In this document: piece after piece, positions 1,768 to 20,056 of the stretch
Layout of the letters: each line of letters begins with the position of its first letter
How positions within the stretch are numbered: position 1 is the stretch's first letter
Virus record (IMG/VR): IMGVR_UViG_3300002835_000007
Span: 1-64,000 of that record
Direction: 5' to 3' (one strand)
Length of the DNA stretch: 64,000 nt
Translations under genes and position numbers: made by a program
The notes under the pieces: model-generated
Databases searched by the model: none
What the model saw: the letters and a program-made list of their open reading frames with translations, nothing else
What the model was told of the DNA's origin: nothing

Positions 1768-1796
1768 TTGACAATTAAACGAACTTTTAGTATATT
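1768..1796 (+). promoter_or_regulatory. promoter upstream of leader peptide 1
   Basis: TTGACA-N17-TATATT. Confidence 0.7.
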
Positions 1797-1825
1797 AGTG
1801 TATATTTAATTAATAAAGATAAAAA

Positions 1826-1915
1826 ATGAGAACAATTAATAACATATTTGAGTTTGACTTCTTCGCAGCCGAGGCCGATTTTAGCCTAGGGAGGTCAACC
1901 TATGTATGTAGTTAA
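1826..1915 (+). CDS. attenuator leader peptide 1 (MRTINNIFEFDFFAAEADFSLGRSTYVCS)
   Basis: 29-codon ORF with A-rich start; 12 consecutive F/E/D/A codons; overlaps antiterminator strand AGGTCAACCT 1892-1901. Confidence 0.8.
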   Translation: MRTINNIFEFDFFAAEADFSLGRSTYVCS

Positions 1916-1939
1916 TTGTAAGTAACTATACTATATTTG

Positions 1940-1970
1940 AAAGGTTGACCTAAACAGTCAACCTTTTTTT
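1940..1970 (+). terminator. intrinsic terminator of attenuator 1
   Basis: AAAGGTTGAC-CTAAACA-GTCAACCTTT then T-run; 5' arm also perfectly complementary to 1892-1901. Confidence 0.85.
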
Positions 1971-2007: not shown

Positions 2008-2128
2008 GTTTGGAAGTTTAAAAAATAGTTCATACATTTGTAAAACAAAATTAAAGAAAACGTTCTTTGAAAGATTAAAAAAAAAAATAAAAAACATTTG
2101 CAAATTAAAAATATTATTTATACATTTG
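2008..2128 (+). promoter_or_regulatory. tandem Bacteroidota-type promoters with boxA-like element
   Basis: TTTG...TACATTTG at 2033-2040 and 2121-2128; GTTCTTTGAAAG at 2062-2073. Confidence 0.7.
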
Positions 2129-2142
2129 TAATATCAAAATAA

Positions 2143-2215
2143 GGACAGATAGCTCAGTTGGTAGAGCATCGCACTGAAGATGCGAGTGTCGGGGGTTCGA
2201 TTCCCTCTCTGTCCA
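2143..2215 (+). tRNA. tRNA-Phe(GAA)
   Basis: GGACAGA/TCTGTCC; TCGCA-CTGAAGA-TGCGA. Confidence 0.96.
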
Positions 2216-2223
2216 CAAAACAA

Positions 2224-2297
2224 CGCCCGTTGGACAAGCGGTTTAAGTCGTCTCCCTTTCACGGAGAAGAGCATGGGTTCGAATCCCATACGGGTGA
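2224..2297 (+). tRNA. tRNA-Glu(TTC)
   Basis: CGCCCGT/ACGGGTG; TCTCC-CTTTCAC-GGAGA. Confidence 0.95.
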
Positions 2298-2346
2298 CCT
2301 TGACTTTTTTGTACCTTGTCGTATATTTATTGTAAAAGATAGATAT

Positions 2347-2988
2347 ATGGCAAGAGCAGAAAAGAAAATACATTACCTATATAAAACTACTTGTTTCATA
2401 ACTGGTAGATGGTATATAGGAATGCACAGCACACATAACTTAGAAGATGGTTATATGGGTAGTGGAAAACGATTAAGGTATTCTATACGTAAGTATGGAG
2501 TTGATAATCATAAAAAAGAGATTTTAGAGTTCTTTGAGAGTAGGGAATTATTAATTGAAGCTGAAATAAAAGCAATCACTGAAGATATGGTTACAGATAA
2601 AAACTGTATGAATCTTAAATTAGGTGGCCAAGGAGGTTTTATTAATGAAGAACATAAACAAAAATTCATAAATTCAGATGGACCTAAAAATTTTGCTAAA
2701 AGGTTGATTGAGGATGAAGAATTTAGATTAAAACATTTTGCGATTATATCTGAAAGGATGAAGAAAACACATGCAAATGGTAAAATTAAATATGATACAT
2801 TCAAAGGTAAACAACATTCAGATGAAACTAAACAAAAAATGAGTGAATCATCTAAAGGTAAAGGTATTGGTGAATCAAATAGTCAATACGGTACTTGTTG
2901 GATAACCAAAGAGAGTGTTAATAAAAAAATTAAAAAAGAAGACCTTGACACATACCTAATTGAAGGATGGGTTAAAGGTAGAAGATAA
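2347..2988 (+). CDS. GIY-YIG homing endonuclease (Seg-like) with NUMOD3 motif
   Basis: YLYKTT...WYIGMHST...YMGSG; FKGKQHSDETKQKMSES; true start ATG 2347. Confidence 0.9.
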   Translation: MARAEKKIHYLYKTTCFITGRWYIGMHSTHNLEDGYMGSGKRLRYSIRKYGVDNHKKEILEFFESRELLIEAEIKAITEDMVTDKNCMNLKLGGQGGFINEEHKQKFINSDGPKNFAKRLIEDEEFRLKHFAIISERMKKTHANGKIKYDTFKGKQHSDETKQKMSESSKGKGIGESNSQYGTCWITKESVNKKIKKEDLDTYLIEGWVKGRR

Positions 2989-3056
2989 ACGCTCGCACTG
3001 ATAGTTACGTATCGGTGGAGAGGATGAGTATGACAATCTGGAAAGACAGATATTAC

Positions 3057-3131
3057 GGTCTATTGGTCCAATGGCTAGGATACGGCACTGTCTATGCTGT
3101 GGTGAGAGTTCAATTCTCTCATAGACCGCCA
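3057..3131 (+). tRNA. tRNA-Asp(GTC)
   Basis: GGTCTAT/ATAGACC-G-CCA; CGGCA-CTGTCTA-TGCTG. Confidence 0.9.
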
Positions 3132-3216
3132 ATTGTAAATACCCAGTGGTTTGGTGGGTATGGATACTAAAAGCTATTAAGAGGTTCGAAACTTGAAAAT
3201 AGTTACCAAACCATAT

Positions 3217-3290
3217 GGGGCAGCATGTACCAAGGCTGGCGTTTCTCCCTTGCAAGGAGAGAGTGGAGAGTTCGATTCTCTTCTGCTCCA
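3217..3290 (+). tRNA. tRNA-Ala(TGC), atypical D arm
   Basis: GGGGCAG/CTGCTCC with G3:U70; TCTCC-CTTGCAA-GGAGA. Confidence 0.8.
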
Positions 3291-3291
3291 C

Positions 3292-4071: not shown

Positions 4072-4074
4072 TCA

Positions 4075-6006: not shown

Positions 6007-6012
6007 CAATAA

Positions 6013-7082: not shown

Positions 7083-7126
7083 TTAGCAATGATATTCTAC
7101 GTGGGGAACTGCGTAGAATGTTACAA

Positions 7127-7267: not shown

Positions 7268-7296
7268 CCAAATTGGAGTCCTCTGCTCCTTAAACA

Positions 7297-7437: not shown

Positions 7438-7441
7438 AAAT

Positions 7442-7519
7442 ATGGCGTTAGCTCAGCTGGTAGAGCACTGTTGGTTTTAACTGGCAGATGGGTCGTAGGT
7501 TTGAATCCTACACGCTGTA
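7442..7519 (+). pseudogene. aberrant tRNA (Lys-like loop, 7-bp anticodon stem)
   Basis: Normal D arm and GTAGG-TTTGAAT-CCTAC T arm; CTGTTGG-TTTTAA-CTGGCAG arm; weak acceptor. Confidence 0.6.
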
Positions 7520-7681
7520 CAATGTTTCTTTGTTTTATAAAACAAAGTGGTGGTAGTCTGGGGTGTTAAAACTCTCGGTCCCAAAAAAATAAGGTTGGTA
7601 ATTTACTGTAAAGCTATGGCTTCCTTCAAAAAAGTGGCACTATCGTTTGGTAGTGTCATTTTTTATTTGTACCTTTGTCAA

Positions 7682-8164: not shown

Positions 8165-8210
8165 TTGAAATATTATGTATACATTTGTATCAACATTAAA
8201 AATTTAAGAA

Positions 8211-8930
8211 ATGGGATTAAGAGATTTATTCATTGTTAGTGATGAAAACGCTAACGAACAACCAAAACAAGTGGAAACCGTAAAACCAACTAATACGGCT
8301 GCGACTACAAAGTTTCCATCATCTACTCCTCAAGTAGAAGAAAGTGGAGGGTTATTTAGTGCGTTTGGTTTTGGTAAAACAGAAACACCAACAACTAATA
8401 TACCAACACAAGTGTCTAATGAGCATTTAGAGAAAGCATTTGATTTGTACCAAAATGGTTTTGATTCATTAAACCAACCTGGGTATGACTTCTATGAGTT
8501 TTATCAAGCAGTAATGCAAGCTGGACCAACAAATCCACAAATCTATGTTATGGCATTGACTATGGCTAGTGCTATGGACAAGTCTATATCGAAAGATAAG
8601 TTGGTGCAACAATCAGAGTTTTATATTGCTGAAATTAACAAAGTTTACCAAGAATATAACTCAAAAGGTTTATCTAAGAAACAAGACTTAACAACTCAAA
8701 AACAAAATGAGAATGAATCTCTTGTAGGTGAATTATCTTTGTTAAGACAACAACTAGAAGCAATCCAAACTCAGATTGCTGACAGAGAAAACAAATTATC
8801 AGTTATCGATGTGAAGTATGCACCGATGATGAGTGAAGTAGATAGCAAATTGTCAGCAAATGACATGGCTAAAAACAAAATCGTTCAATCTATTGAACAA
8901 GTTAAAAATGGAATTATTAACAATTTATAA
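8211..8930 (+). CDS. coiled-coil protein, first gene of ABC/OmpA operon
   Basis: ORF track; LNQPGYDFYEF motif; C-terminal coiled coil. Confidence 0.75.
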   Translation: MGLRDLFIVSDENANEQPKQVETVKPTNTAATTKFPSSTPQVEESGGLFSAFGFGKTETPTTNIPTQVSNEHLEKAFDLYQNGFDSLNQPGYDFYEFYQAVMQAGPTNPQIYVMALTMASAMDKSISKDKLVQQSEFYIAEINKVYQEYNSKGLSKKQDLTTQKQNENESLVGELSLLRQQLEAIQTQIADRENKLSVIDVKYAPMMSEVDSKLSANDMAKNKIVQSIEQVKNGIINNL

Positions 8931-8941
8931 AAAGTAGAAAA

Positions 8942-10069
8942 ATGCAAACTAAAACTGAAACAGCAACATCATTTAAAGCGAATTTATCTGAGTTGCCAAT
9001 TTTAAAACACTTTGACCAAAACGAAATCTCTGCAAAGGTAGACAGTTTCCGTAAAGGTGAAAAAGGAATGTTCTGGTTCTTTAAATTAGCAGCACTTATT
9101 GGTGTGGGTTATTTAACATGGACTTATGTATTACCACCAGTTTTCCAAGCAATTGGACAATTCTTAGCTGTAGCAGCAACTGGTGTTTTGATTATAGCTG
9201 GAGTTATTATGGCACCAGTGATTGTGAAAGGGATTCGTTTATTTACACGTTCTTTACACAAAGCACTTATCAAATATGACCCATTTGCTCAGTTGGAAAT
9301 CGAAAGACAAAAAATGCTTGAAAATCAACGTACTTTCAGAACAGCTAAAGGTAACATCGCTTCATTAAAAACTGAGATGGAAGTAGAAGCTGATAAATCT
9401 GAGAAAGAAGCTGAATCTGGTCAAACACGTATCATCTCTTTACAAGGTAAAGCTGAAAAGATTAAGCATGAAATGGATGCTATGGTTCAAAAGATGGGTA
9501 TTGATGCTAAATCAGAAGATGATTATGTAAACAGAGCATCTGAATTACAAAAGATTTTGGCTGAAGCACAACGTGTAGCTAACAAATTAAACCAATCTAA
9601 AGACTTTGTTCAAAAGTATGGTTCACGTGCCGCTATCATGAAGAAAATGGGTCAAAAACTTACAATGGTTGAAACCGTTATGGATATTAAAATTCAAGAC
9701 TTTGATGCAACTATAGATATGTTGAAGAAAGACTATGAGTTCGGTCAAAAATCTAATGCTGCGACTAGTGCTGCTAAATCAGCAATGGGTTTCACAAAAG
9801 GATGGGAATTCGACTATGCATTGGATGTTGTAACATCAACTATTGCTAATGATATCGCAATTACTGCTGGTAACTTGAGAGATATCGAAACACTTACAAG
9901 TAACTACTCATTAGATTCTGATGAATTGTATGCAAACTTGAATGCTGTGGCTGATAAAATCAAAGTTGGTCAAGATATCATACCACAAGCAAAACAATAT
10001 TCAAACCCAGAATATACTCTTTCTCAATCAGATAAAGTTAAATCTGGAGGATTTGGAGAATTATTTTAA
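8942..10069 (+). CDS. membrane-anchored long coiled-coil protein (PspA-like architecture)
   Basis: Two N-terminal hydrophobic helices then ~250 aa coiled coil. Confidence 0.65.
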   Translation: MQTKTETATSFKANLSELPILKHFDQNEISAKVDSFRKGEKGMFWFFKLAALIGVGYLTWTYVLPPVFQAIGQFLAVAATGVLIIAGVIMAPVIVKGIRLFTRSLHKALIKYDPFAQLEIERQKMLENQRTFRTAKGNIASLKTEMEVEADKSEKEAESGQTRIISLQGKAEKIKHEMDAMVQKMGIDAKSEDDYVNRASELQKILAEAQRVANKLNQSKDFVQKYGSRAAIMKKMGQKLTMVETVMDIKIQDFDATIDMLKKDYEFGQKSNAATSAAKSAMGFTKGWEFDYALDVVTSTIANDIAITAGNLRDIETLTSNYSLDSDELYANLNAVADKIKVGQDIIPQAKQYSNPEYTLSQSDKVKSGGFGELF

Positions 10070-10283
10070 AAAAAGTTGCAAAATGTTTGGAGAATTAAAA
10101 TATTCTCCATACATTTGTAATATCAAATTAAATGTTTAACTAAAAAAAAAAGAAAATGTCAAAAACATCGAATCACGTAAAAATCTCTTGTTTGTTAGAG
10201 TGGATTAAATCTATTAAAAAATACAGATTTTAATCTTAGAAACAAAAATAAATTATTAAAGTAAAAAACGAAAAAAGAAAAAA

Positions 10284-12122
10284 ATGGAAAATGTTAATGG
10301 AGTACAAGGTGGTTTAGCGGCAAAATGGAATCGTTTGACCAAATTAAGTAAAATGTTAATTATGGGTGTTGGTTTAGCAATTGTTTTAGCAGTTGTGTAT
10401 ATGGCCGCACCAGGTTTAAGAGTTGCAGTGTCAAAAGAAATGAAAGCGTTAGCAATCAATTCTGACGATTTAAACAACGTAACTAAAGGTGCTGAATTAC
10501 CTTTACCATCTACGGAAGTGTCTAGTAACTTTGACGAAAGTAAGTTGATTAGAATAGCTGAGTACGCATGGAATGGTAACTCTGGTATGATTGTAGCAAA
10601 TGGTGGACCAAGAACAACTGAAGGGTCTCTTATGGAGGCTGCTGATGTAAACTTGGAAATCGTGCGACAAGATATGGTTGGTGGTTTACGTGATATGCAA
10701 ATAAAATTTGTTGATGAATTTAGCAAAGGTGTTGCTTATCCAAAATCACAAAAGTCAGCGTTTGCTGTATCTATCATGGGTGATGGTGTGCCTTTTTACA
10801 TTACAACTACTCAAAAAGCGTTAGATGAGAAGTTTGGTAAAGGTAAATATCACGTAGTTAATATCGGTGCAATCGGTTTATCATATGGGGAGGACAAATT
10901 AATTGGTCCAAAAGTATGGCAAGATAACCCACAAACACTTAGAGGTGCGGTTGTATCATCAGTAATCGGTGATGGTGACTGGGTAGTAGCTGTAAACTAT
11001 GCATCTGCGAATGGTATTCCAGTTAATCCAGACCCAACAACTTTTGATGCTAATGCATTGAACTTTGTACCGTCACAAGATGATGACTTTATCAACTCTG
11101 TAAAAGAATTGATTAAATCACAAAACACTGGATTTACTGTACCTTTGAAAGAAGTTAAAGATGGTAAATTGACTGGTAAGACAATCAACCATAAAATTGA
11201 TGGTGCAACAACATGGACTCCAGGTGATAAAATGGCTTTTGATGCGTTGACTGGGTTTACTGATGTTGTTACAACAAAAGATTTCGTTAACCAAATGGCT
11301 ACATCAATTATCGTAGTGAAAGAATGGGCGATACAACATGAAAAAGAAGTAACGAATATTTTGAAACAAACATATACTGCTTGTAACCAAATTAAACAAT
11401 ACGATAGATGGGCCCGTAAGGCTGCTGAATGTGTTGCAAAAACATACAACTTTGAAACTGCTGATTATTGGTACAAAATGTTCAAAGGACAAAAAGGTAC
11501 TAAAGGTGGTTTAGATTACAATATTGGTGGTACACGTGTATTTAACTATGCTGATGCTATGCAATACTACGGAATCACGGATGGTAATAACAGATATAAA
11601 GCGGTTTACAATCAAGTATCTATGTACTTAACTGACTTGAACCCATGTGGTTTCAACGAAACATGTAAAGATGGTGTTGTGCAATACGAAGATGCTGTTA
11701 ACTTATACTTCTTGAAATCTATTAGTGATGTTGATGCTGGAACTACTCAAAAGTTCAACTATGTTGAGAATAAAACTAAAGTGATGGCAGATGGACAATG
11801 GAACATTAGCTTTGCTACTGCAAGTACAACTATCCAAGGTTCTGAGAAAACGTTAGAGACTATCTACAACTTGTTAATTCAAGCTGAACAAACTAAATTG
11901 AAAGTGATTGGTCATACAGATAATGTTGGTAATCCACAATCTAATATGGTATTGTCTAGAGGTCGTGCTAACTCAGTTGTTGATTATTTGGTTAATCGTG
12001 GGATTCCTAAAGCACGTATTCAATTTGTGGATGGTTTAGGTGATACTAATCCAGTAGCTACAAATGCAACTGCGGCTGGTAAATCGAAAAACAGACGTGT
12101 AGAGATTACATTGTTACAATAA
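10284..12122 (+). CDS. ABC substrate-binding-like protein fused to OmpA C-terminal peptidoglycan-binding domain
   Basis: N-terminal TM; C-terminal GHTDNVG..N..LS..RA..V..YL...NRRVEI. Confidence 0.85.
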   Translation: MENVNGVQGGLAAKWNRLTKLSKMLIMGVGLAIVLAVVYMAAPGLRVAVSKEMKALAINSDDLNNVTKGAELPLPSTEVSSNFDESKLIRIAEYAWNGNSGMIVANGGPRTTEGSLMEAADVNLEIVRQDMVGGLRDMQIKFVDEFSKGVAYPKSQKSAFAVSIMGDGVPFYITTTQKALDEKFGKGKYHVVNIGAIGLSYGEDKLIGPKVWQDNPQTLRGAVVSSVIGDGDWVVAVNYASANGIPVNPDPTTFDANALNFVPSQDDDFINSVKELIKSQNTGFTVPLKEVKDGKLTGKTINHKIDGATTWTPGDKMAFDALTGFTDVVTTKDFVNQMATSIIVVKEWAIQHEKEVTNILKQTYTACNQIKQYDRWARKAAECVAKTYNFETADYWYKMFKGQKGTKGGLDYNIGGTRVFNYADAMQYYGITDGNNRYKAVYNQVSMYLTDLNPCGFNETCKDGVVQYEDAVNLYFLKSISDVDAGTTQKFNYVENKTKVMADGQWNISFATASTTIQGSEKTLETIYNLLIQAEQTKLKVIGHTDNVGNPQSNMVLSRGRANSVVDYLVNRGIPKARIQFVDGLGDTNPVATNATAAGKSKNRRVEITLLQ

Positions 12123-12139
12123 ACTAACATTATTTAATT

Positions 12140-12170
12140 AAAGTCCCTAACTTTGTTAGGGATTTTTTTT
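12140..12170 (+). terminator. intrinsic terminator
   Basis: AAAGTCCCTAAC-TTT-GTTAGGGATTTTTTTT. Confidence 0.75.
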
Positions 12171-12190
12171 GAACTTTAAAAAATAAAAAT

Positions 12191-12961
12191 ATGAAAAATT
12201 TAATTAAACCATTTCAAGAACTTAAAAGTACGTCAAGAGGTACAATCATGTTAGGTTGGTTAGTAGCTATACTTACATTTTGGACCTTGAATATGTTTGG
12301 AACATCACATATGTTTCCAACACCAACACAAGTTATCCATGGATTTGGTGACTTATGGGCTGAAGGATTAGTTGTTCACATAGTTAGTTCAATTGCGTTA
12401 TGTGCACATGCTGTATTCTTATCAGTGATTATATCATTGGTTATCGCATATTCAACAGCAATTCCAATTATGAAGCCAGTAGGTACATTTATATCTAAAT
12501 TAAGATATCTTCCATTGACTGGTATTGCTTTTTATTTAGCTATCATTATTAACGATGCTAGAAGTCTTCAAGTATGGGTGCTTGTAGTGTTCATGACAAC
12601 GTTTCTAACGACTTCTCTTATTCAAATGATACAAGATATCCCCAAAGAAGAATTGGACCACGCAAAAACGCTAGGATGCAATCGTTGGGAGATTTTATGG
12701 GAAGTAGTTATCAAAGGTAGATTAGATTACGTGTTAGAGTTGGTAAGACAAAACTTAGCAATTGTATGGATGATGCTTGTAACGGTTGAGTCTATATTAG
12801 CAGCAGCTGGTGGTATGGGATTCTTAATCAAAAATAGTGACAAGTTAGGTGACAATGGTAGAGTAATTGCATTACAAATTATAATTGTAGTTGTAGGGTT
12901 ATCATTGGACTTTATCATCACTAAATTACGTAAATTAATATTCAGATATTCAAATTATTAA
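12191..12961 (+). CDS. ABC transporter permease (TauC/SsuC-like)
   Basis: FPTP..V; EAA-loop-like DHAKTLGCNRW; WMMLVTVE...GMGFLI. Confidence 0.88.
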   Translation: MKNLIKPFQELKSTSRGTIMLGWLVAILTFWTLNMFGTSHMFPTPTQVIHGFGDLWAEGLVVHIVSSIALCAHAVFLSVIISLVIAYSTAIPIMKPVGTFISKLRYLPLTGIAFYLAIIINDARSLQVWVLVVFMTTFLTTSLIQMIQDIPKEELDHAKTLGCNRWEILWEVVIKGRLDYVLELVRQNLAIVWMMLVTVESILAAAGGMGFLIKNSDKLGDNGRVIALQIIIVVVGLSLDFIITKLRKLIFRYSNY

Positions 12962-12964
12962 GAC

Positions 12965-13786
12965 ATGAGTTATAGAGAATTAGATACAATATTATACGTT
13001 GATAAGATTAGCGTTGGGTATGAAGGAAAAACAATTCTTAAAGATATTTCAATCATTGAGAAAAATATAGTAAGAGATGGTCACGATTCCACTGGACAAA
13101 CAATTGCGGTGTTAGGTCGTTCTGGTAGAGGTAAATCTACATTGTTCAAAGCGTTGACTGGATTGGTTAAACCAATGTCTGGCCAGATTTTGATAAGTGA
13201 TATGGCTACAGAAGTTGCAGATGATGCAAAAATATTGGCTGAAGGTGATGTAGGGTTTGTTGACCAAAAATACACTTTGTTCAGACATAAAACAGTATAT
13301 CAGATTTGTCAATATGCATTAAGAAAAAGTAAAACGACAAAACAAGAGAAAGATAAGTTGATTACTGAGTTTTTAACTGAATGGGGTTTATTAGAACACA
13401 AAGATAAATACTCATGTGAGTTATCTGGTGGTCAAAGACAAAGAACTGCAATCATTGAGCAAATGTTATCATCTAAACATTTTATGATTTTGGATGAACC
13501 ATTCTCTGGATTGGACGTTGGAAACATTGAGAAAGTTAAAACATCTTTCCAAAAGATTTTGGATGCTGACGAATATAACACAATCATATTTTCAACACAC
13601 GATATCAGATTGGCTGCTGAATTGGCTGATAGTATTTATATTATTGGTAACCCAGAGGGTACAACTGAATATTCAACAGTCTTAAAACACTATGATTTAA
13701 AGAAAATGGGATTAGCTTGGACACCATATGGTGAGGGTCATAGAAAAGTGGTTGCTGACATAAAAGAAATATTATTAAAATCGTAA
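12965..13786 (+). CDS. ABC transporter ATPase (TauB/SsuB-like)
   Basis: GRSGRGKST, LSGGQRQR, ILDEPFSGLD, STHD. Confidence 0.93.
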   Translation: MSYRELDTILYVDKISVGYEGKTILKDISIIEKNIVRDGHDSTGQTIAVLGRSGRGKSTLFKALTGLVKPMSGQILISDMATEVADDAKILAEGDVGFVDQKYTLFRHKTVYQICQYALRKSKTTKQEKDKLITEFLTEWGLLEHKDKYSCELSGGQRQRTAIIEQMLSSKHFMILDEPFSGLDVGNIEKVKTSFQKILDADEYNTIIFSTHDIRLAAELADSIYIIGNPEGTTEYSTVLKHYDLKKMGLAWTPYGEGHRKVVADIKEILLKS

Positions 13787-14023
13787 CAATGATAAATTTT
13801 TTTGGTAAATTAGGTCTAATTGCACATGGTCAATTAAGATTGTTTAAAAATCTCTTCTATGAGATACAGTTGTTTGGTCGTATTAGAGATTTTAAAGATG
13901 GTATTACATTCTTTGAGTTTAAATGTAATTTAGACAGATATAAGAGTGAACATTCACCATCTTTTCAATTAGAATTAACAATATTAAACTTATATAATCA
14001 TATATGGGTTTATCAAAACAATT

Positions 14024-14350
14024 TTGAAGATGATAATAGTAAGTGATAGGTTTTTAAGGTTCTTGACATTCTTTTTAGGTGGTGGTCAATTACCAGCAGC
14101 TATGGCGTTCTACCCTTTTGTTATATTGAATAGCAAAGTGGTAGCAACGCCAGAGTTGATAAACCATGAAAGGATTCACCTAAGACAACAAATCGAAATG
14201 TTAATTATACCATTCTATATTTGGTATCTTATTGAGTATTATAGAAAGGGGTATTATAATGTTTCTTTTGAAAAAGAAGCGTATGCTAACGATAAAAACT
14301 TTAATTATCTTAAAAAAAGACGTATATTTAGTTTTATTAGATATTTATAA
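14024..14350 (+). CDS. HExxH-motif hypothetical protein
   Basis: LINHERIHLRQQ...FEKEAY. Confidence 0.7.
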   Translation: MKMIIVSDRFLRFLTFFLGGGQLPAAMAFYPFVILNSKVVATPELINHERIHLRQQIEMLIIPFYIWYLIEYYRKGYYNVSFEKEAYANDKNFNYLKKRRIFSFIRYL

Positions 14351-14468
14351 TAAAGACTTTGTTCATAAGAACAACTTTTAAGCAGAGTTAAGGTTGTTGT
14401 TTTTAATTAAAAAAAAATGGATAGTGAATGTAACAGTAAGCAGAAAAGTTGTGGGGACAGTTTGCCTC

Positions 14469-15272
14469 ATGATAGCGACTTTTCTGAACCCTTTAGGGTT
14501 CGACATACTGGTTTTCAAACTGATGCAGTTAACCAACGATTATTGGAATACAATGTACATTCTATATGGATTGGCATTTGTGTTCTTATTGCTGTCGCAC
14601 TTATTTTTTAGATTAAAAAAAAGAGTTTTAGGAAACTTATTTGTAACAATAGCATTATTTGTTAATCCATTGGGTTATGATGTTGTTGTTTACTGTATTA
14701 CGTTATTAACAAAAAATTATTGGATGACTATGGCGATTATGTATGCGTTAGCATTTGTTTTTTTTGGATTTTTTATGTACCTTTACAAAATGAATCCAAT
14801 CAAACTCATTAAAGACAAGATTATTGGGTTACATGAAAAATTTTTAAAAAAAAAAGTAAAAATGAAAACATTTGATGAACTATTTGACGAATTCTTTAAT
14901 AAAAAGAATTCTGAAGAACCAAAAAAGAAATCTAAACCTTCAAGAGAAGAATTTAGTGACGGATTATCTAAATTAATAAACATTTTATCTAGTGCTAAGC
15001 AAATAGATGATGAAGATGAAAAATTTAAAATAGACAATGAATATGGTGAACCATCTAGAGTTGAGTATTTCAATGAGGATGAATTGTATTTTAAAAAAAC
15101 AATATGGGAAGTTGAAGATGGTGAAATTGTTAAATTAGAAGTGTCAGATGCACCATTTGATGAAGACGAACACAAATCTTTAGAAGAATTATTAGAAGAA
15201 GCTATTGCTGCTGAAGAGTACGAAAAAGCTGCTGAAATAAGAGATGAATTAAATAAAATTAAAAATAATTAA
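14469..15272 (+). CDS. duplicated membrane domain in frame with a UVR-domain protein (possibly two genes; second ATG 14862)
   Basis: Two NPLG(F/Y)D...YW..M..Y.LAFVF repeats; C-terminal LEEAIAAEEYEKAAEIRDEL. Confidence 0.65.
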   Translation: MIATFLNPLGFDILVFKLMQLTNDYWNTMYILYGLAFVFLLLSHLFFRLKKRVLGNLFVTIALFVNPLGYDVVVYCITLLTKNYWMTMAIMYALAFVFFGFFMYLYKMNPIKLIKDKIIGLHEKFLKKKVKMKTFDELFDEFFNKKNSEEPKKKSKPSREEFSDGLSKLINILSSAKQIDDEDEKFKIDNEYGEPSRVEYFNEDELYFKKTIWEVEDGEIVKLEVSDAPFDEDEHKSLEELLEEAIAAEEYEKAAEIRDELNKIKNN

Positions 15273-15291
15273 AAAAAAAATTACAAAAAAC

Positions 15292-15322
15292 TTGACAAAT
15301 GTAAAAAAAGTTCGTACATTTG
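15292..15322 (+). promoter_or_regulatory. promoter upstream of leader peptide 2
   Basis: TTGACA-N17-TACATTTG. Confidence 0.75.
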
Positions 15323-15378
15323 TAGTATAATTTTGAATTTTAAAAAAAAACGATATATTTAATTAATACAAAAGCGAA

Positions 15379-15474
15379 ATGAAAACAACAGTTACTACAT
15401 ATCAACCGAAACAAACGCAAGGCGGAAAGCCTAGTGTATCGGGTATGTTATATCTGTTGAGTAACGAAGAATAA
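15379..15474 (+). CDS. attenuator leader peptide 2 (MKTTVTTYQPKQTQGGKPSVSGMLYLLSNEE)
   Basis: 31-codon ORF; K/T/Y/Q/P/G block; overlaps antiterminator strand ATCGGGT 15438-15444. Confidence 0.8.
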   Translation: MKTTVTTYQPKQTQGGKPSVSGMLYLLSNEE

Positions 15475-15498
15475 AGATTCTAAATTACAAGATATTCC

Positions 15499-15531
15499 AA
15501 ACCCGATTTCAGAAATGACATCGGGTTTTTT
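15499..15531 (+). terminator. intrinsic terminator of attenuator 2
   Basis: AAACCCGAT-T-TCA-GAAA-TGA-C-ATCGGGTTT then T-run. Confidence 0.85.
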
Positions 15532-15627
15532 GTTTTAGGTACCTATGCCTCTTAAAAAATAGGAACGTTATTTGACATGTTGGTTTATTTTGGGTTGTAC
15601 ATATACAATAGTAGGAATGTAAATTAT

Positions 15628-15701
15628 CGAGTAGTATAGGAGTGGTTTATCTAGCGGCATTTGGAATGCCGAGCACGTTGGTTCGAATCCAACCTATTCG
15701 A
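15628..15701 (+). tRNA. tRNA-Pro(TGG)
   Basis: CGAGTAG/CTATTCG; CGGCA-TTTGGAA-TGCCG. Confidence 0.92.
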
Positions 15702-15751
15702 CCCTAATGGTTTCCCATAAGCCATTAAAAAAACAAGTTATGGGAAGTTAT

Positions 15752-15825
15752 TTTCCGATAGACAAACTGGCAAAGTCACTCGCCTTTGAAGTGAGAATTT
15801 GGGGGTTCGAAGCCCTCTCGGAAAT
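15752..15825 (+). tRNA. tRNA-Gln(TTG)
   Basis: TTTCCGA/TCGGAAA; CTCGC-CTTTGAA-GTGAG. Confidence 0.9.
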
Positions 15826-15883
15826 CAAAAAAAATAAAAAAACTTGCATATGTTAAAAATAGTTCATACATTTGTAAAAGAAA

Positions 15884-15957
15884 AATAAAAGATAGCTTCA
15901 GCAATTTCACAACTATCAAACTTTTAATTTGAATCAGAAAATGCTATCTTGATTTAT
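15884..15957 (+). ncRNA. CAGCAA-stem RNA displaying a lone Lys(UUU) anticodon hairpin
   Basis: AAGATAGC(15889)/GCTATCTT(15943), TTCAGCAA, TCAAA-CTTTTAA-TTTGA 15916-15932; own promoter TACATTTG 15867. Confidence 0.7.
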
Positions 15958-16043
15958 TGGAGGGTGGCCGAGTGGTTAAAGGCGGCAGACTGTAAATCTG
16001 TTCTCGTAAGGGTACGGGGGTTCGAATCCCTCCCCTCCAACCA
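15958..16043 (+). tRNA. tRNA-Tyr(GTA)
   Basis: GCAGA-CTGTAAA-TCTGT; long variable arm; ACCA end. Confidence 0.96.
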
Positions 16044-16051
16044 AAAATTAT

Positions 16052-16124
16052 GCCTTTGTAGCACAGCTGGTAGTGCACTTCACTTGTAATGAAGGGGTCG
16101 TAGGTTCGAATCCTATCAAAGGCT
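16052..16124 (+). tRNA. tRNA-Thr(TGT)
   Basis: GCCTTTG/CAAAGGC; CTTCA-CTTGTAA-TGAAG. Confidence 0.96.
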
Positions 16125-16216
16125 CACGTGTTAACTAGGGTCGAGCCACATTTTGCCTCGGTTAACAATAGAAGAAAGAACCTAGAGGTGGCCGTGACTG
16201 TCTTTCTTCGAAATTT

Positions 16217-16289
16217 GCAGATATCGTATAATGGTTTATTATATTAGCCTTCCAAGCCTAGGATTTCAGTTCGATTCTGAATATCTGCT
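16217..16289 (+). tRNA. tRNA-Gly(TCC), imperfect anticodon stem
   Basis: GCAGATA/TATCTGC-T; loop CTTCCAA. Confidence 0.8.
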
Positions 16290-16348
16290 CAAAAAGAGGA
16301 ATAACAAGTGTGGATGCCTCAAGGTACAGCTGACCTACCACACTCTAT

Positions 16349-16420
16349 GCGAGAGTAGCTCAGTGGTAGAGCATCTGGTTACCAACCAGAGGGTCGTGGG
16401 TTCGAATCCCATCTCTCGCT
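16349..16420 (+). tRNA. tRNA-Gly(ACC)
   Basis: GCGAGAG/CTCTCGC-T Gly-type body; TCTGG-TTACCAA-CCAGA. Confidence 0.9.
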
Positions 16421-16428
16421 CAAAATAT

Positions 16429-16555
16429 GGGGGTGTTGAAATGTTAGATAAATCACATTCTGCCTTTTAGATTAAAGAATGTTTGCAGCAAAATCAAAAT
16501 TATTCACGCAAACTGTAAATTTGATAAAACGTTGGTGCAATTCCAGCCGCCCCCA
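16429..16555 (+). ncRNA. tRNA-like ends enclosing CAGCAA module and Tyr(GUA) anticodon hairpin
   Basis: GGGGGTG/CGCCCCC-A; ACATTCT/AGAATGT + TTGCAGCAA; CAAA-CTGTAAA-TTTG; GTTGG-TGCAATT-CCAGC. Confidence 0.7.
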
Positions 16556-16678
16556 CTAAAATAAAATTATAAAAAACTTAAAAAATAAAAACTATGAAAA
16601 ATTCTATCAACATTAAGCGAAAGATAAAACGATAAGGCACTCGGCCAAGCTGGTTACGAGTGTCAATGGAAAAAACAC

Positions 16679-16752
16679 GCCTTCGTAGCTCAGCTGGATA
16701 GAGCACTCCACTTTTAATGGAGGGGTCATGGGTTCGAGTCCCATCGGGGGTA
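16679..16752 (+). tRNA. tRNA-Lys(TTT)
   Basis: CTCCA-CTTTTAA-TGGAG; full cloverleaf. Confidence 0.94.
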
Positions 16753-16757
16753 CATAT

Positions 16758-16830
16758 GTACTCGTAGCTTAGTTGGTAGAGCACTCCGCTTTTAACGGAG
16801 GGGTCAAGAGTTCGAATCTCTTCGGGTACA
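16758..16830 (+). tRNA. tRNA-Lys(TTT)
   Basis: GTACTCG/CGGGTAC; CTCCG-CTTTTAA-CGGAG. Confidence 0.94.
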
Positions 16831-16861
16831 CAACTATTAATAAACCAACATGTAACGTATT

Positions 16862-17230
16862 ATGAAACCAGAACAATATAATAAATTGACTGAACTTATT
16901 GGCAAAGATAAAGCTGATGAAGTAAGAGAAAATCTAATCAAGCATAAAGAGGAAAAGAAAGTTCAGAAACAAAAAGATGCTGCTGAATTAGAAGAAATGG
17001 TTGATAGGATGATACCAAAAACAGATTTAAAAGGTGGTGTTTATTACAATGGTCATAGATGGAGAGGAAAACATGTTGCCATGTGGGATGCTGAAAAGGA
17101 AACGTTTTTAACTATCAACTATACTATGGGTAATTTCTTCTTAGAAGAATTGCAGCATTACGAAGATGTTGCTGAAACAAGAATAGATGGTTTCATACCG
17201 TTTATTGAGATAGAAAAGTTTACTTTATAA
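16862..17230 (+). CDS. hypothetical protein
   Basis: ORF track. Confidence 0.7.
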   Translation: MKPEQYNKLTELIGKDKADEVRENLIKHKEEKKVQKQKDAAELEEMVDRMIPKTDLKGGVYYNGHRWRGKHVAMWDAEKETFLTINYTMGNFFLEELQHYEDVAETRIDGFIPFIEIEKFTL

Positions 17231-17263
17231 TGTTTTTTGATATTTATAACTAAAATAGATATC

Positions 17264-18271
17264 ATGATTAAAAAACTATTAAGAGAAGGTATAATAAAAA
17301 CAAATTTAACTGAAGACTCAATTAAATTATTTGAAACAGTTAAAGATTATTATGATTTTTCTGGTGACTTACAAGAAAATATTGACGCATTAAATGAATT
17401 GACAGTTTATTTAAAAGAAGAAGAGGATTTTGACCCATATGGTCATGGAGATAAACCATCAGAACCAACGACAGATGAAAATGTGTGTTTATTAAAGTTT
17501 TCAAAATCTAACACAAAATTAGACTGGCCTTCATTATCATTACCAGCTGGTTTTACATGTCCAGCAGCAACAGCGTGTAAAAATTTTCCAGCTAAAATGG
17601 GTAAAAGATTTTCAGATGGTTCAGCTGTTAAAAAAGCTAGTGAAAAAACTAAATTTCAATGTTATGCTGCTAGAGAACAAGGTCAATATCCTTCATTAAA
17701 TAAAAATGTTTTTAGTAACTTAAATTTATTGAAGGATGCTAATAAAACTGGTGGTGTTGATGGCATGGCTAACTTAATAATTGAATCATTAGAAAATGCT
17801 AATTTTACTTCTAAAATTTTTAGAATTCATGAAGGTGGTGATTTCTTTTCTAATTCTTATTTCCAAGCTTGGATTAAAGTTTGTCAAAAATTTCCAGAAA
17901 TAACATTTTATACACATACAACATCATTAACTTTTTGGATTAATAATAAATCATCTGTACCTAACAATATGAATTTAATTGCTTCTATGGATGAAGAAAA
18001 TTATAACACAATTGTAGATAATGGGTTAAGATATTCTAAAGTTGTGTTTAGTGAAGAAGAAGCAATTAATGAAAGATTACCTATTGATTATGATGATTCA
18101 TTAGCTTGTTGTACTAACAAAAATTTTGCATTATTATTACATGGACAACAACCAGCTGGTTCAGAAGCGTCAAAAGCAGTTTCAAAAACTAAAAAACAAG
18201 GTATTCCAGATAAATTAAAAGGTTTACATAAAGCAAACAAATCAAAAAGAAAAGAATTAATGAGAAAATAA
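17264..18271 (+). CDS. GP88-like (radical-SAM-related) phage protein
   Basis: SLPAGFTCP...C...CYA...RIHEGGDFFS; N-terminal IKKLLRE. Confidence 0.7.
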   Translation: MIKKLLREGIIKTNLTEDSIKLFETVKDYYDFSGDLQENIDALNELTVYLKEEEDFDPYGHGDKPSEPTTDENVCLLKFSKSNTKLDWPSLSLPAGFTCPAATACKNFPAKMGKRFSDGSAVKKASEKTKFQCYAAREQGQYPSLNKNVFSNLNLLKDANKTGGVDGMANLIIESLENANFTSKIFRIHEGGDFFSNSYFQAWIKVCQKFPEITFYTHTTSLTFWINNKSSVPNNMNLIASMDEENYNTIVDNGLRYSKVVFSEEEAINERLPIDYDDSLACCTNKNFALLLHGQQPAGSEASKAVSKTKKQGIPDKLKGLHKANKSKRKELMRK

Positions 18272-18297
18272 AAAAAGGAGCTATTAGCTCCTTTTTT
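18271..18297. terminator. bidirectional intrinsic terminator
   Basis: AAAAAAGGAGCTA-T-TAGCTCCTTTTTT between convergent genes. Confidence 0.85.
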
Positions 18298-18301
18298 GTT
18301 T

Positions 18302-18442
18302 TTAACCTTGTCCTACGCTTTTCTTTTTATAGTTTTTAGCGTTTTTAGATACTGAAGTTTTACATTTAGAATGAACTCCTGGTCTTTTCTTTTTACCTTT
18401 ACTAATTTTAGTAGAAGATACTGTTTTAACTGCTTTTGCCAT
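18302..18442 (-). CDS. 46-aa basic protein (MAKAVKTVSS...KNYKKKSVGQG)
   Basis: Minus-strand ORF with TATTTATA upstream, ending at bidirectional terminator. Confidence 0.7.
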   Translation of the reverse strand: MAKAVKTVSSTKISKGKKKRPGVHSKCKTSVSKNAKNYKKKSVGQG

Positions 18443-18781
18443 AATATTAAGTTTTACATATATAAATACTTGATAAACCCATTTTTTATTTGTATATTTA
18501 GTAAAAAATTATTATGAAGAATCTTATTACTATTGACGTAGACACAGAAAGAGAGCAACCAATACTGATTGGTAAAGGTGCTGAAATTCCATCACCAACA
18601 AATAAAGATGAAGCACGTGAAATGATTGTAAATGACATAAAATGTGTTTGTGAAACATTATGCATTTTAATTGACGTTGCTGACCAAAATAAATACGCAT
18701 TAAAAAGCGAATTGATTACTGAATCAATCAAGCAATTAACAAAAATGCTTTAATATAACATTTAAAATAAAATAATATGAA

Positions 18782-19291
18782 ATGATTGAAATTGATATTA
18801 CTGACGACCAAAAACAAAGAGCAAAAGAATTATATGAGTTTAATGTTTTGAAAGGGTCAGTGACTGAAGGCAAAGGCAACGAAGTTGGTGCATTAGGTGA
18901 AGTGATTGTTTGGGACCAATTTAAAAAGATAACAAAATATGTTGGTTCATATGATTATGATATGATAATCAGAGGTAAAAAAGTCGATGTTAAAACAAAA
19001 TTACAAAACTTTGAACCAAAACCATATCACAGAGCTAACATATTCGCTTACAACATAAGACAGAAATGTGATTACTATTGTTTTGTTGCTATTTTATCTG
19101 ATTTATCAAAAGGTTGGATTATTGGGTGGAAAGAAAAAGATAAATTTTTCGAAGAAGCGATATTTAAGAAAAAAGGGGAAGTGGATAACGTTGGAACAAA
19201 CGAAGGTTGGGTTTTCAAAGGTGACTGCTACTGTTTAAATAATGACCAATTAGATAATAAGGTGAAAGAAAGGTCAACTAGTATTAATTAA
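18782..19291 (+). CDS. PD-(D/E)XK nuclease-like protein
   Basis: GALGE...YDMIIRGKKVDVKTK. Confidence 0.6.
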   Translation: MIEIDITDDQKQRAKELYEFNVLKGSVTEGKGNEVGALGEVIVWDQFKKITKYVGSYDYDMIIRGKKVDVKTKLQNFEPKPYHRANIFAYNIRQKCDYYCFVAILSDLSKGWIIGWKEKDKFFEEAIFKKKGEVDNVGTNEGWVFKGDCYCLNNDQLDNKVKERSTSIN

Positions 19292-19317
19292 TTAATTAAT
19301 TCGTGAAACAAGAAAAT

Positions 19318-19785
19318 ATGGAATTAGTAACAACCTATTTATGCAAGACCAGTGATGTCGGTGTACATTCAAATGTATTCGGTGGTAGGTTAATATCAAT
19401 TATTGATGAAAGCAGTGCAGCGTATGTAGCACAAATATGTGATACCCCAAGAGTTGTAACAGTTAAAATTGATGACTTGATATTTGATAAACCAGTAAAG
19501 GTAAATAACATAATTAAATTATATGCAAAAGTTTTGAATTTTGGAAAAACTTCTATAACTTTGTATGTAGAATTAAGAAAACATGATGTTTATACTGGCG
19601 ACCAAGAAATCGCAATAAAAACAAACATAAAGTTTGTTAGGATTAATGATGAAGGTAAACCAATTCCAATAACTGAAGAAGTTAAAAAAAGGTATTACGA
19701 AAGAATTGAGAAATATGGTAAAGGACTTTTAAGCACTGAGGAAAAAGAAATTGCTATAAAAAATGAAACCAAAAATCTCAATTAG
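19318..19785 (+). CDS. acyl-CoA thioesterase (HotDog, YciA-like)
   Basis: NVFGGRLISIIDE; FDKPVKV; GKTSI; FVRINDEGKP. Confidence 0.88.
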   Translation: MELVTTYLCKTSDVGVHSNVFGGRLISIIDESSAAYVAQICDTPRVVTVKIDDLIFDKPVKVNNIIKLYAKVLNFGKTSITLYVELRKHDVYTGDQEIAIKTNIKFVRINDEGKPIPITEEVKKRYYERIEKYGKGLLSTEEKEIAIKNETKNLN

Positions 19786-20056
19786 CTTTGGTGAACCAGT
19801 TGCTTTATGTAATCGTTGTGATGCTGTTATGTGTTATGTTCACTGTAAATTCGAAAAATGTAAAGTTCTTGAAGTAAGAACAAATAATGGTGTTCCTTAT
19901 ATTAACACACCAATAGGTGACGAAGCACCATTATATTGTTTAAATTGTGAATTATTAACTAATTTAAAATTAAATTAATATGAATTATAACGAAAATAAC
20001 ATTAAGTTCCTAGCTGAATACATATTCAGTTATGTGATTAGATACCCAAATTAAGA

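What the first reader, a model, noticed from the sequence alone, without database searches (positions are those of the whole stretch)
15292..16830. Second attenuator: K/T/Y/Q/P/G leader in front of the Pro-Gln-Tyr-Thr-Gly-Gly-Lys-Lys tRNA array
Seen in sequence: promoter TTGACA-N17-TACATTTG, then ORF MKTTVTTYQPKQTQGGKPSVSGMLYLLSNEE (15379-15474). Of codons 2-18, 16 of 17 encode K, T, Y, Q, P or G, which is exactly the amino-acid set of the eight downstream tRNAs. Codons AAA, ACA, CAA and GGA match the encoded anticodons directly. ATCGGGT (15438-15444) in the ORF can pair with ACCCGAT (15501-15507), the 5' arm of the terminator at 15499-15531. Inference: one leader integrates six tRNA pools. 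The match recurs independently with a non-overlapping amino-acid set, which makes chance unlikely.
Basis: partly seen in the sequence, partly recalled or inferred. Interest (0 to 1): 0.95.

Follow-up and report, generated by a model that had tools for sequence, protein, structure and literature searches.

The report
Leader-peptide attenuators controlling phage tRNA operons
A large uncultured phage puts a tiny "test" gene, spelled with exactly the amino acids whose tRNAs lie downstream, and a switchable terminator in front of its tRNA gene cluster, so it probably makes its own tRNAs only when those tRNAs run short; related phages use four such switches that together cover all 20 amino acids.

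Summary
Window 15292-15538 holds a Bacteroidota-type promoter, a 31-codon ORF and a hairpin with a U-run. Codons 2-18 are 16/17 K/T/Y/Q/P/G, and the eight tRNAs downstream are Pro, Gln, Tyr, Thr, Gly x2 and Lys x2.

In the whole 64-kb window, in six frames, this is the only 17-residue stretch that rich in that set. A blind scan of short ORFs upstream of tRNA arrays returns only this leader and its paralogue at 1826 (core FEFDFFAAEADF, followed by Phe/Glu/Asp/Ala tRNAs).

The RNA folds as a textbook four-region attenuator: a 1:2 hairpin over the regulatory codons, a 2:3 antiterminator and a 3:4 terminator.

Related metagenomic phage contigs carry 66 distinct leaders in four classes: {F,E,D,A}, {P,Q,Y,T,G,K}, {C,V,L} and {S,H,W,I,M,N,R}. 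These sets do not overlap and add up to all 20 amino acids. Each class precedes an array of the same isotypes. Of the array anticodons, 96% have a readable codon in their own leader.

The most likely mechanism is ribosome-mediated attenuation that senses the supply of the very tRNAs encoded downstream. No experiment exists, and nine literature searches found no prior description. One caveat: the window lineage has extra promoters downstream of its attenuators.

The parts
15292..15322 (+). Promoter of the leader transcript: -33 TTGACA (15292-15297), 17-nt spacer, -7 element TACATTTG (15315-15322), Bacteroidota type
   Evidence: Sequence. The motif TTG-N17-22-TAnnTTTG occurs 37 times on the + strand and 8 times on the - strand of the window. 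The GTTCRTACATTTGTA core has 17 copies, all on +, against 0.8 expected.
15323..15378 (+). A-rich 5' UTR without a Shine-Dalgarno sequence; contains TATATTTAATTAATA (15354-15368), which is shared exactly with the paralogue at 1801-1815
15379..15474 (+). Leader ORF, 31 codons plus TAA
   Evidence: The ORF is intact in all 13 distinct orthologues.
15382..15432 (+). Regulatory codons 2-18: T x5, K x3, Q x3, G x2 (GGC + GGA), P x2, Y x1, plus one Val
15386..15409 (+). Region 1: 5' strand of the 1:2 hairpin, lying inside the regulatory codons (codons 3-11)
   Evidence: MFE and centroid structure. The fold of 15379-15480 has z = -4.2.
15415..15437 (+). Small inner hairpin (GGCG..GCC) at the tip of the 1:2 structure
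   Evidence: It is conserved in the RNAalifold consensus of 13 orthologues.
15438..15459 (+). Region 2: pairs either with region 1 or with region 3 (antiterminator strand; core ATCGGGT at 15438-15444 plus ATATCT at 15450-15455)
   Evidence: The cognate duplex is -10.8 kcal/mol against a mean of -6.6 for non-cognate pairs, and 0 of 20 non-cognates is as good.
15461..15488 (+). Middle hairpin that contains the stop codon and forms the loop of the antiterminator; a ribosome waiting at the stop codon would occupy it
   Evidence: the ribosome footprint is an inference.
15490..15507 (+). Region 3: AGATAT (15490-15495) plus the terminator 5' arm AAACCCGAT (15499-15507)
15520..15538 (+). Region 4: terminator 3' arm ATCGGGTTT (15520-15528) and the U-run
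   Evidence: hairpin -14.8 kcal/mol, z = -4.1. Compensatory changes occur in 6 of the 12 predicted consensus pairs (9 in the terminator, 3 in the inner hairpin) across orthologues.
15542..15583 (+). Conserved post-terminator hairpin (CCTAT..ATAGG, 15542-15563) and motif TTTGACATGTTGG (15571-15583); role unknown
15627..15826 (+). tRNA-Pro(tgg) at 15627-15704 and tRNA-Gln(ttg) at 15752-15826: the genes that can be reached only through the attenuator
15844..15874 (+). Internal consensus promoter, specific to the window lineage, between tRNA-Gln and tRNA-Tyr
   Evidence: Absent in L006 and L019, where the Gln-Tyr spacer is only 67-77 nt.
15958..16831 (+). tRNA-Tyr(gta), Thr(tgt), Gly(tcc), Gly(acc), Lys(ttt), Lys(ttt)
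1768..1970 (+). Paralogous attenuator (class {F,E,D,A}): promoter TTGACA at 1768-1773 and TATATTAG at 1791-1798; leader ORF at 1826-1915 with core FEFDFFAAEADF; region 2 near 1893-1902; terminator at 1939-1967 plus U-run
2010..3291 (+). Two extra consensus promoters (2010-2040 and 2098-2128), then tRNA-Phe and Glu (2143-2299), a homing-endonuclease ORF (2347-2988), and tRNA-Asp and Ala (3057-3291)

Best explanation
The element is a ribosome-mediated (leader-peptide) transcription attenuator placed in front of a phage tRNA operon.

Transcription starts at the promoter at 15292-15322. A ribosome then translates the 31-codon leader.

If the aminoacyl-tRNAs for Lys, Thr, Tyr, Gln, Pro and Gly are plentiful, the ribosome runs to the stop codon. 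There it sits in what would be the loop of the antiterminator. Once the ribosome has passed or been released, region 2 (15438-15459) re-pairs with region 1. The hairpin 15499-15528 plus U-run then forms and transcription stops before tRNA-Pro.

If any of these tRNAs is scarce, the ribosome stalls on codons 2 to about 15 and covers region 1. Region 2 is then free to pair with region 3 (15490-15507). The terminator cannot form, and RNA polymerase reads into the tRNA genes.

The regulatory codons are read by the very isoacceptors encoded downstream, so the products of the operon switch it off again. This is demand-driven negative feedback.

What is shown: the parts, their alternative pairings, their co-variation, and the codon/tRNA correspondence in four independent classes. 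What is inferred: translation of the leader, stalling, termination and read-through.
For: 1. Composition. The leader core is the only such stretch in the window and sits directly upstream of the matching array.

2. Four paralogous classes have disjoint sets that sum to all 20 amino acids. Each precedes tRNAs of its own set. There are 66 distinct leaders: 8 in C1, 13 in C2, 9 in C3 and 36 in C4. The fraction of residues 2-20 that fall in the class's own set is 0.62/0.89/0.56/0.92, against a background of 0.24/0.31/0.16/0.30 (first 29 leaders).

3. The match holds at the isoacceptor level. Of 391 array anticodons, 375 have a readable codon in their own leader. Examples: Arg(acg) 25/25, Arg(tct) 29/29, Ser(gct) 21/21, Ser(tga) 22/22, Gly(acc) 8/8, Gly(tcc) 12/12. 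In the window, GGC + GGA serve Gly(acc) + Gly(tcc).

4. Structure. The leader RNA folds with z = -5.9. In the 28 instances from all classes examined so far:
- all 28 have a hairpin with U-run 21-32 nt after the stop codon;
- in 27 of 28 that hairpin forms in the full-length minimum-energy fold;
- 28 of 28 form the 2:3 antiterminator when the first 43 nt are masked;
- 27 of 28 show 1:2 pairing with region 1 in codons 3-14.

5. Co-variation. Cognate region 2 / terminator-arm duplexes average -11.1 kcal/mol against -7.2 for non-cognate pairs. Terminator pairs carry compensatory changes.

6. Orthologues that are only 30-58% identical in the core keep the composition. In C2, 22 of 35 minority residue types stay in the set, against 31% expected (P 9e-5).

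7. The third codon position is the most variable. Entropy by codon position is 0.17/0.40/0.60 in C4 and 0.18/0.31/0.68 in C1. Every variant keeps an intact ORF.

8. In relatives L006, L019 and L050 the only consensus promoter for the array is the one upstream of the leader.
Against: - There are no expression data. Translation of the leader, termination at about 15530 and read-through are all unobserved.
- In the window lineage consensus promoters lie downstream of both attenuators (15844; 2010 and 2098). Much of each array can therefore be transcribed without passing the switch.
- A few arrays hold tRNAs that are not represented in their leader: His in two C2 arrays, Thr/Gln/Pro/Ala in some C4 arrays, Phe in one C3 array, and Arg(cct) 0/7.
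- Three class-1 instances show only weak direct region 2 / terminator-arm pairing in the simple duplex test.
- A stall at the last regulatory codons (16-18) would itself cover the start of region 2.
- The host is unknown. It is inferred to be Bacteroidota from the promoter type and from protein matches. Transcription-translation coupling in such hosts is assumed, not known.
Confidence: 0.8

Rival explanations
1. The hardware is the same attenuator, but the signal it evolved to read is amino-acid starvation or general translation stress of the host rather than shortage of particular tRNAs. Making more tRNA would then be a by-product or a timing device, for example to switch tRNA genes on late when the infected cell is exhausted.
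For: Classical attenuators respond to charging level, which depends on both the amino acid and the tRNA. Nothing in the sequence separates the two. The extra unregulated promoters in the window lineage suggest the switch only modulates expression.
Against: Extra tRNA does not cure amino-acid starvation. The codons match the operon's own isoacceptors, including both members of the Arg, Ser, Leu and Gly pairs. That pattern is what product feedback predicts and is not needed for an amino-acid sensor.
Confidence: 0.13
2. The leader is not translated. The codon-like triplets act as an RNA sensor that binds tRNA anticodons directly (T-box-like) or binds a protein, and this switches the terminator.
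For: The alternative 2:3 and 3:4 pairings could in principle be driven by any ligand. Bacteroidota mRNAs lack Shine-Dalgarno sequences, so ribosome loading cannot be read from the sequence.
Against: - An ATG, an open frame of 24-35 codons and a stop 21-32 nt before the terminator are kept in every variant.
- Variability peaks at the third codon position.
- Substitutions keep amino-acid set membership rather than nucleotide identity.
- No T-box or other Rfam family matches 15292-15626.
- Between 3 and 7 different specificities in one leader has no precedent for a direct tRNA binder.
Confidence: 0.03
3. The ORF is an ordinary small phage gene or a chance ORF, the hairpin is simply its terminator, the tRNA arrays are driven by their own promoters, and the composition match is coincidence.
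For: The window lineage does have promoters downstream of both terminators. Small ORFs are common in phage tRNA regions such as that of T5.
Against: - The probability per leader is about 1e-7 to 1e-10.
- The match recurs in four classes with disjoint sets.
- It is kept in diverged orthologues with reshuffled order.
- Relatives lack internal promoters.
- The same test gives no signal in T5.
Confidence: 0.02

Closest known systems
Leader-peptide transcription attenuators of amino-acid biosynthesis operons in Proteobacteria (trp, his, phe, leu, thr, ilvGMEDA, ilvBN)
   Same: - A short translated leader rich in regulatory codons.
- Four RNA regions with mutually exclusive 1:2, 2:3 and 3:4 pairings.
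- An intrinsic terminator before the structural genes.
- Multi-amino-acid leaders already exist: thr has Thr + Ile, and ilv has Leu + Val + Ile.
(Established knowledge; model discussed in PMC1183508.)
   Different: - The regulated genes are tRNAs, not enzymes.
- The element is in a phage.
- One leader carries 3-7 amino-acid specificities.
- Four leaders partition the whole code.
- Codons are matched to individual isoacceptors.
- The promoter and translation signals are of the Bacteroidota type.
- There is no sequence or Rfam similarity to the known leader families.
pheM leader attenuator of the pheST (phenylalanyl-tRNA synthetase) operon of E. coli
   Same: A leader-peptide attenuator that controls a component of the translation apparatus in response to the charged-tRNA level (established knowledge).
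   Different: It controls a synthetase, has one amino-acid specificity, and is a cellular gene.
T-box riboswitches of Gram-positive bacteria
   Same: They sense the supply of specific tRNAs and switch a terminator/antiterminator pair. Functionally they are the nearest tRNA-sensing transcription switch.
   Different: A T-box binds uncharged tRNA directly, without a ribosome, through a specifier codon and the T-box sequence, and it controls synthetase, transport and biosynthesis genes. Here there is an ORF, no T-box motif and no Rfam match.
Phage-encoded tRNAs as counter-defence or supply for translation (mycobacteriophage tRNAs; T5 tRNAs against retron Eco7 and PARIS)
   Same: They give a reason why a phage would need to top up particular tRNAs such as Lys and Tyr when the host depletes them (PMC10264068, PMC11555353, PMC11464382).
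   Different: Those studies concern the tRNAs themselves. No regulatory sensor was described, and the T5 tRNA region shows no leader/array match in my scan.

Membership tests
Ribosome-mediated (leader-peptide) transcription attenuator | Short ORF with a start codon in the 5' leader of the operon | tested here: met
   ATG 15379 to TAA 15474. The ORF is intact in 66 distinct variants of four classes. Variation shows coding-type third-position bias. Actual translation was not observed.
Ribosome-mediated (leader-peptide) transcription attenuator | Regulatory codons for the amino acid(s) connected with the operon's product | tested here: met
   16/17 codons, unique in the window. A blind scan gives P 7.8e-7. 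The 4x4 class/set matrix is diagonal. The isoacceptor match is 375/391.
Ribosome-mediated (leader-peptide) transcription attenuator | Intrinsic terminator between the leader ORF and the structural genes | tested here: met
   9-bp G+C-rich stem at 15499-15528 plus U-run, z = -4.1. Present 21-32 nt after the stop codon in 28/28 instances. Compensatory pairs are seen.
Ribosome-mediated (leader-peptide) transcription attenuator | Antiterminator (2:3) that uses the terminator's 5' arm and excludes the terminator | tested here: met
   15438-15455 pairs with 15490-15507. It forms in 28/28 instances when region 1 is masked. Cognate duplexes are stronger than non-cognate ones.
Ribosome-mediated (leader-peptide) transcription attenuator | Region 1 overlapping the regulatory codons and sequestering region 2 (1:2) | tested here: met
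   15386-15409 pairs with 15439-15459, z = -4.2. Seen in 27/28 instances.
Ribosome-mediated (leader-peptide) transcription attenuator | Structural genes depend on read-through (no promoter of their own) | tested here: inconclusive
   In the window this is true for tRNA-Pro and tRNA-Gln only, because a consensus promoter at 15844 precedes Tyr-Lys. No internal consensus promoter is found in L006, L019 or L050.
Ribosome-mediated (leader-peptide) transcription attenuator | Read-through rises when the cognate aminoacyl-tRNA is limiting | not testable with these tools
   Needs reporter, in-vitro or infection experiments.
Curated Rfam leader families (His, Trp, Thr, Leu, Leu/Phe leaders) and T-box (RF00230) | Match to the family covariance model | tested here: not met
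   cmscan of window 1-20000 at E up to 1 lists only tRNAs and weak unrelated hits. Nothing is found in 15292-15626 or 1768-2140.

The most novel reading that the evidence does not exclude
A lineage of large phages, probably infecting Bacteroidota, runs a complete, self-regulating tRNA supply. Four leader-peptide sensors divide the 20 amino acids between them and carry a codon for almost every isoacceptor. Each switches on its own tRNA operon when any of its tRNAs becomes limiting, for instance after host shut-off or attack by tRNA-cleaving defence nucleases, and switches it off again once the phage tRNAs have refilled the pool. This would be the first tRNA genes known to be controlled by translational attenuation, and the first built-in sensor of tRNA depletion in a virus.
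Probability: 0.45. Interest if true: 0.95.

Novelty: new variant of a known kind. Interest (0 to 1): 0.9.

Why it matters
Why phages carry tRNA genes, and how they use them, has been debated for fifty years. The proposed answers include codon compensation, replacement of degraded host tRNAs, and escape from tRNA-cleaving defences. How phage tRNA genes are regulated was not described in any paper my searches found.

These leaders are a readable record of what the phage itself monitors: the supply of each isoacceptor it encodes, grouped in four operons that span the genetic code.

If the mechanism is confirmed, three things follow.
- Leader-peptide attenuation extends from metabolic operons to tRNA genes and to viruses.
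- There is a direct, testable link between tRNA depletion and phage tRNA expression.
- The elements offer compact natural sensors for individual tRNA pools.

The finding also gives a simple computational signature, a leader composition equal to the downstream isotypes, for finding further cases.

Tried and rejected
- Cultured relatives. Megablast and blastn of the region against cultured and GenBank phages, and tblastn of a class-4 leader, gave no match. No cultured phage with these elements was found.
- Neighbour-gene searches. The GP88-like neighbour gene found only six IMG/VR loci and five metagenome loci. The productive step was a DNA pattern taken from the shared promoter and UTR, followed by an alignment of class-4 leaders.
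- Class-2 leader alignment. A degenerate DNA pattern worked but brought about 75 chance loci and five false "leaders" without tRNAs, which were discarded.
- RNAalifold on a MAFFT alignment of 13 orthologues recovered only the terminator and the inner hairpin. The 1:2 and 2:3 helices shift with codon indels, so they were tested sequence by sequence instead.
- The sigma-70 scan is uninformative here. It found 49 sites against 49.8 expected, and the relevant promoters are of the Bacteroidota type.
- Leaders in front of the Met/Arg tRNAs at 5732-6007, and a class-4 leader anywhere in the window: none found. The class-4 element of a near-identical phage (99% in a neighbouring protein) lies outside the window.
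- The bacterial genome collection gave only two MAG contigs, both phage-like. This is not a host feature.
- Phage T5, used as a control, shows no leader/array match.
- Nine literature searches found no prior description. Subscription-only papers are not covered.
Full report
**What is in the window**

The 64-kb window is the first 64 kb of a 206-kb IMG/VR contig. It has about 30% G+C, and nearly all of its long ORFs lie on the + strand.

It carries 19 tRNA genes. Its proteins resemble those of phages of Flavobacteriia; the A1-like DNA transfer protein is 44-45% identical to those of Maribacter and Flavobacterium phages.

Its recurrent promoter motif, TTG-N17-22-TAnnTTTG, is the known consensus of Bacteroidota (my own knowledge of the Bacteroides and Flavobacterium promoter literature). 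The motif occurs 37 times on the + strand and 8 times on the - strand. The host is therefore probably a member of the Bacteroidota, but this is inferred.

**Check of the observation**

- Promoter at 15292-15322.
- A 31-codon ORF at 15379-15474.
- Hairpin 15499-15528 with a U-run.
- The heptamer 15438-15444 is complementary to 15501-15507.
- Eight tRNAs follow at 15627-16831: Pro, Gln, Tyr, Thr, Gly, Gly, Lys, Lys.

Codons 2-18 are 16/17 from {K,T,Y,Q,P,G}. In all six frames of the window this is the only 17-residue stretch that reaches 16/17 for that set. The other leader, at 1826-1915, is the only stretch with 12/12 from {F,E,D,A}.

A scan that knows nothing about the leaders took every 14-50-codon ORF upstream of at least two tRNAs and scored it against the isotypes of those tRNAs. 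It ranks these two ORFs first, at P 2.9e-8 and 7.8e-7. The third-ranked ORF scores 1.2e-2, and the tRNA region of phage T5 gives nothing better than 1.1e-2.

**Anatomy of the switch**

The leader RNA (15379-15538) folds far better than shuffled controls: -46.4 kcal/mol, z = -5.9. In the full-length fold:
- region 1 (15386-15409, codons 3-11) pairs with region 2 (15439-15459) around a small inner hairpin;
- a middle hairpin (15461-15488) holds the stop codon;
- regions 3 and 4 form the terminator.

When the 5' part is removed, as a ribosome stalled on the regulatory codons would do, region 2 pairs with region 3 instead. The pairs are 15438-15444 with 15501-15507 and 15450-15455 with 15490-15495. 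The terminator's 5' arm is then taken.

A ribosome waiting at the stop codon would fill the 34-nt loop of that antiterminator. This explains how uninterrupted translation favours termination, but it is an inference.

The paralogue at 1768-1970 has the same four regions built from unrelated helix sequences. It shares an exact 15-mer in the 5' UTR with the class-2 element.

**Relatives**

Close and distant relatives were collected through several routes.
- A neighbouring gene.
- Walking along one metagenome contig.
- A DNA pattern from the shared promoter and UTR.
- An alignment of leaders.
- A degenerate pattern.

This gave 66 distinct leaders on many contigs of up to 368 kb. They fall into four classes.

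| Class | Core example | Downstream tRNAs |
|---|---|---|
| 1 | FEFDFFAAEADF | Phe, Glu, Asp, Ala |
| 2 (the finding) | KTTVTTYQPKQTQGGKP | Pro, Gln, Tyr, Thr, Gly, Lys |
| 3 | VVVLLVLCLLV | Cys, Val, Leu |
| 4 | INIHMISISNWRRNSHH | Ser, His, Trp, Ile, Met, Asn, Arg |

The four sets are disjoint and add up to all 20 amino acids.

Classes 3 and 4 lie just outside the window. In a contig whose neighbouring protein is 99% identical to the window's, class 3 sits about 450 bases before window position 1 and class 4 about 19 kb further upstream.

The fraction of residues 2-20 that belong to the class's own set is 0.62, 0.89, 0.56 and 0.92. Background is 0.24, 0.31, 0.16 and 0.30, and off-diagonal values are 0-0.24.

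**Finer correspondence**

The match holds at the level of isoacceptors. Of 391 array anticodons within the class sets, 375 have at least one codon in their own leader that they can read by standard wobble.
- The two Arg codons of class 4 are AGA and CGY, for Arg(tct) and Arg(acg).
- Its Ser codons are TCG and AGY, for Ser(tga) and Ser(gct).
- In the window, the two Gly codons are GGC and GGA, for Gly(acc) and Gly(tcc).

There are exceptions: Arg(cct) is never represented (0/7), and about a dozen foreign tRNAs such as His in two class-2 arrays.

**Evolutionary behaviour**

Class-2 orthologues are as little as 30% identical in the core (mean 58%), with residues in a different order. They still stay 74-100% within the set. 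Of the minority residue types in the core, 22 of 35 remain in the set, against 31% expected (P 9e-5).

Variation is greatest at the third codon position, and no variant has a broken frame.

The helices change sequence between orthologues but keep pairing.
- All 28 instances examined have a hairpin with U-run 21-32 nt after the stop codon; it forms in the full-length minimum-energy fold in 27 of 28.
- 28 of 28 form the antiterminator when region 1 is masked.
- 27 of 28 show the 1:2 pairing.
- Cognate region 2 / terminator-arm duplexes average -11.1 kcal/mol against -7.2 for non-cognate combinations.
- Six of the 12 predicted consensus pairs (9 of them in the terminator) show double changes.

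**Mechanism and its limits**

The best reading is classical ribosome-mediated attenuation applied to tRNA genes. Shortage of any aminoacyl-tRNA named in the leader stalls the ribosome, frees region 2, prevents the terminator and lets RNA polymerase enter the array. The new tRNAs then relieve the stall. I put this at 0.8.

The physiological trigger is open. Candidates are host tRNA loss after shut-off, tRNA-cleaving defence systems such as those countered by phage tRNAs (PMC10264068, PMC11555353, PMC11464382), or amino-acid starvation.

The window lineage has consensus promoters downstream of both attenuators: 2010 and 2098 before tRNA-Phe, and 15844 between Gln and Tyr. The switch therefore controls only part of the transcription there. 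In L006, L019 and L050 no such internal promoter exists.

Nothing here shows that the leader is translated or that termination occurs.

**Comparison with the known**

The architecture meets every testable defining feature of leader-peptide attenuators. It matches no curated Rfam leader family and no T-box. It differs from all known cases in three ways:
- what it controls (tRNA genes);
- where it occurs (a phage);
- the number of specificities per leader, and the partition of the whole code among four leaders.

Nine full-text searches found no description of such a system. Only two hits turned up in about 186,000 bacterial and archaeal genomes, both on phage-like MAG contigs. No cultured phage carries it.

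I rate it a new variant of a known kind, with high interest.

Noticed in passing
Rfam scores the region as a tRNA at 34 bits. It could be a suppressor tRNA or a mis-call.
   Followed up: partly
window 7442-7520 and 7153-7265: A tRNA-like gene with a four-base anticodon (ttta), and next to it a Y-RNA-like (YrlA) match at 39 bits, below the Rfam threshold of 69.
   Followed up: no
window 15542-15583; also L006 1630-1671, L040 2614-2626, L048: A small hairpin lies after the terminator, with compensatory changes between relatives. It is followed by the motif TTTGACATNTTGR. The motif occurs once per locus, just before the first tRNA of class-2 and class-4 operons. Its function is unknown; it is too close to the tRNA in some relatives to be a promoter.
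   Followed up: partly
window 2347-2988; L025 6280-6920 and 8009-8590: Homing-endonuclease-like ORFs (NUMOD3 plus a weak GIY-YIG match) are inserted at different places inside or next to the tRNA arrays in different relatives. This suggests they shuffle array content.
   Followed up: partly
window 15885-15950, 6060-6090, 7300-7320; L025 6925-6945: A recurring short motif (GATAGYTTCAGCAA-like) in the spacers next to tRNA genes, possibly an intron or mobile-element remnant.
   Followed up: no
window 16427-16556: The 258-nt gap between tRNA-Gly and tRNA-Lys contains a stretch whose ends are complementary (GGGGGTG..CGCCCCC) and which has a T-arm-like segment. It may be a degenerate or intron-containing tRNA-like gene that the tRNA finders miss.
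   Followed up: no
L040 2400-2620, L048, L049, L050 (outside the window): In class-4 operons a conserved ORF of about 57-80 codons (it starts MGELV.. or MTEER..) sits between the terminator and the first tRNA, so the attenuator there also controls a small protein.
   Followed up: no
window 10284-13786: The phage carries an OmpA-domain protein and an ABC-transporter-like permease/ATPase pair between the tRNA operons. This is unusual cargo for a phage.
   Followed up: no
L019 7098-7173; L176: Two class-2 arrays have gained a tRNA-His that is not represented in their leaders. Array content can therefore change faster than the sensor.
   Followed up: partly
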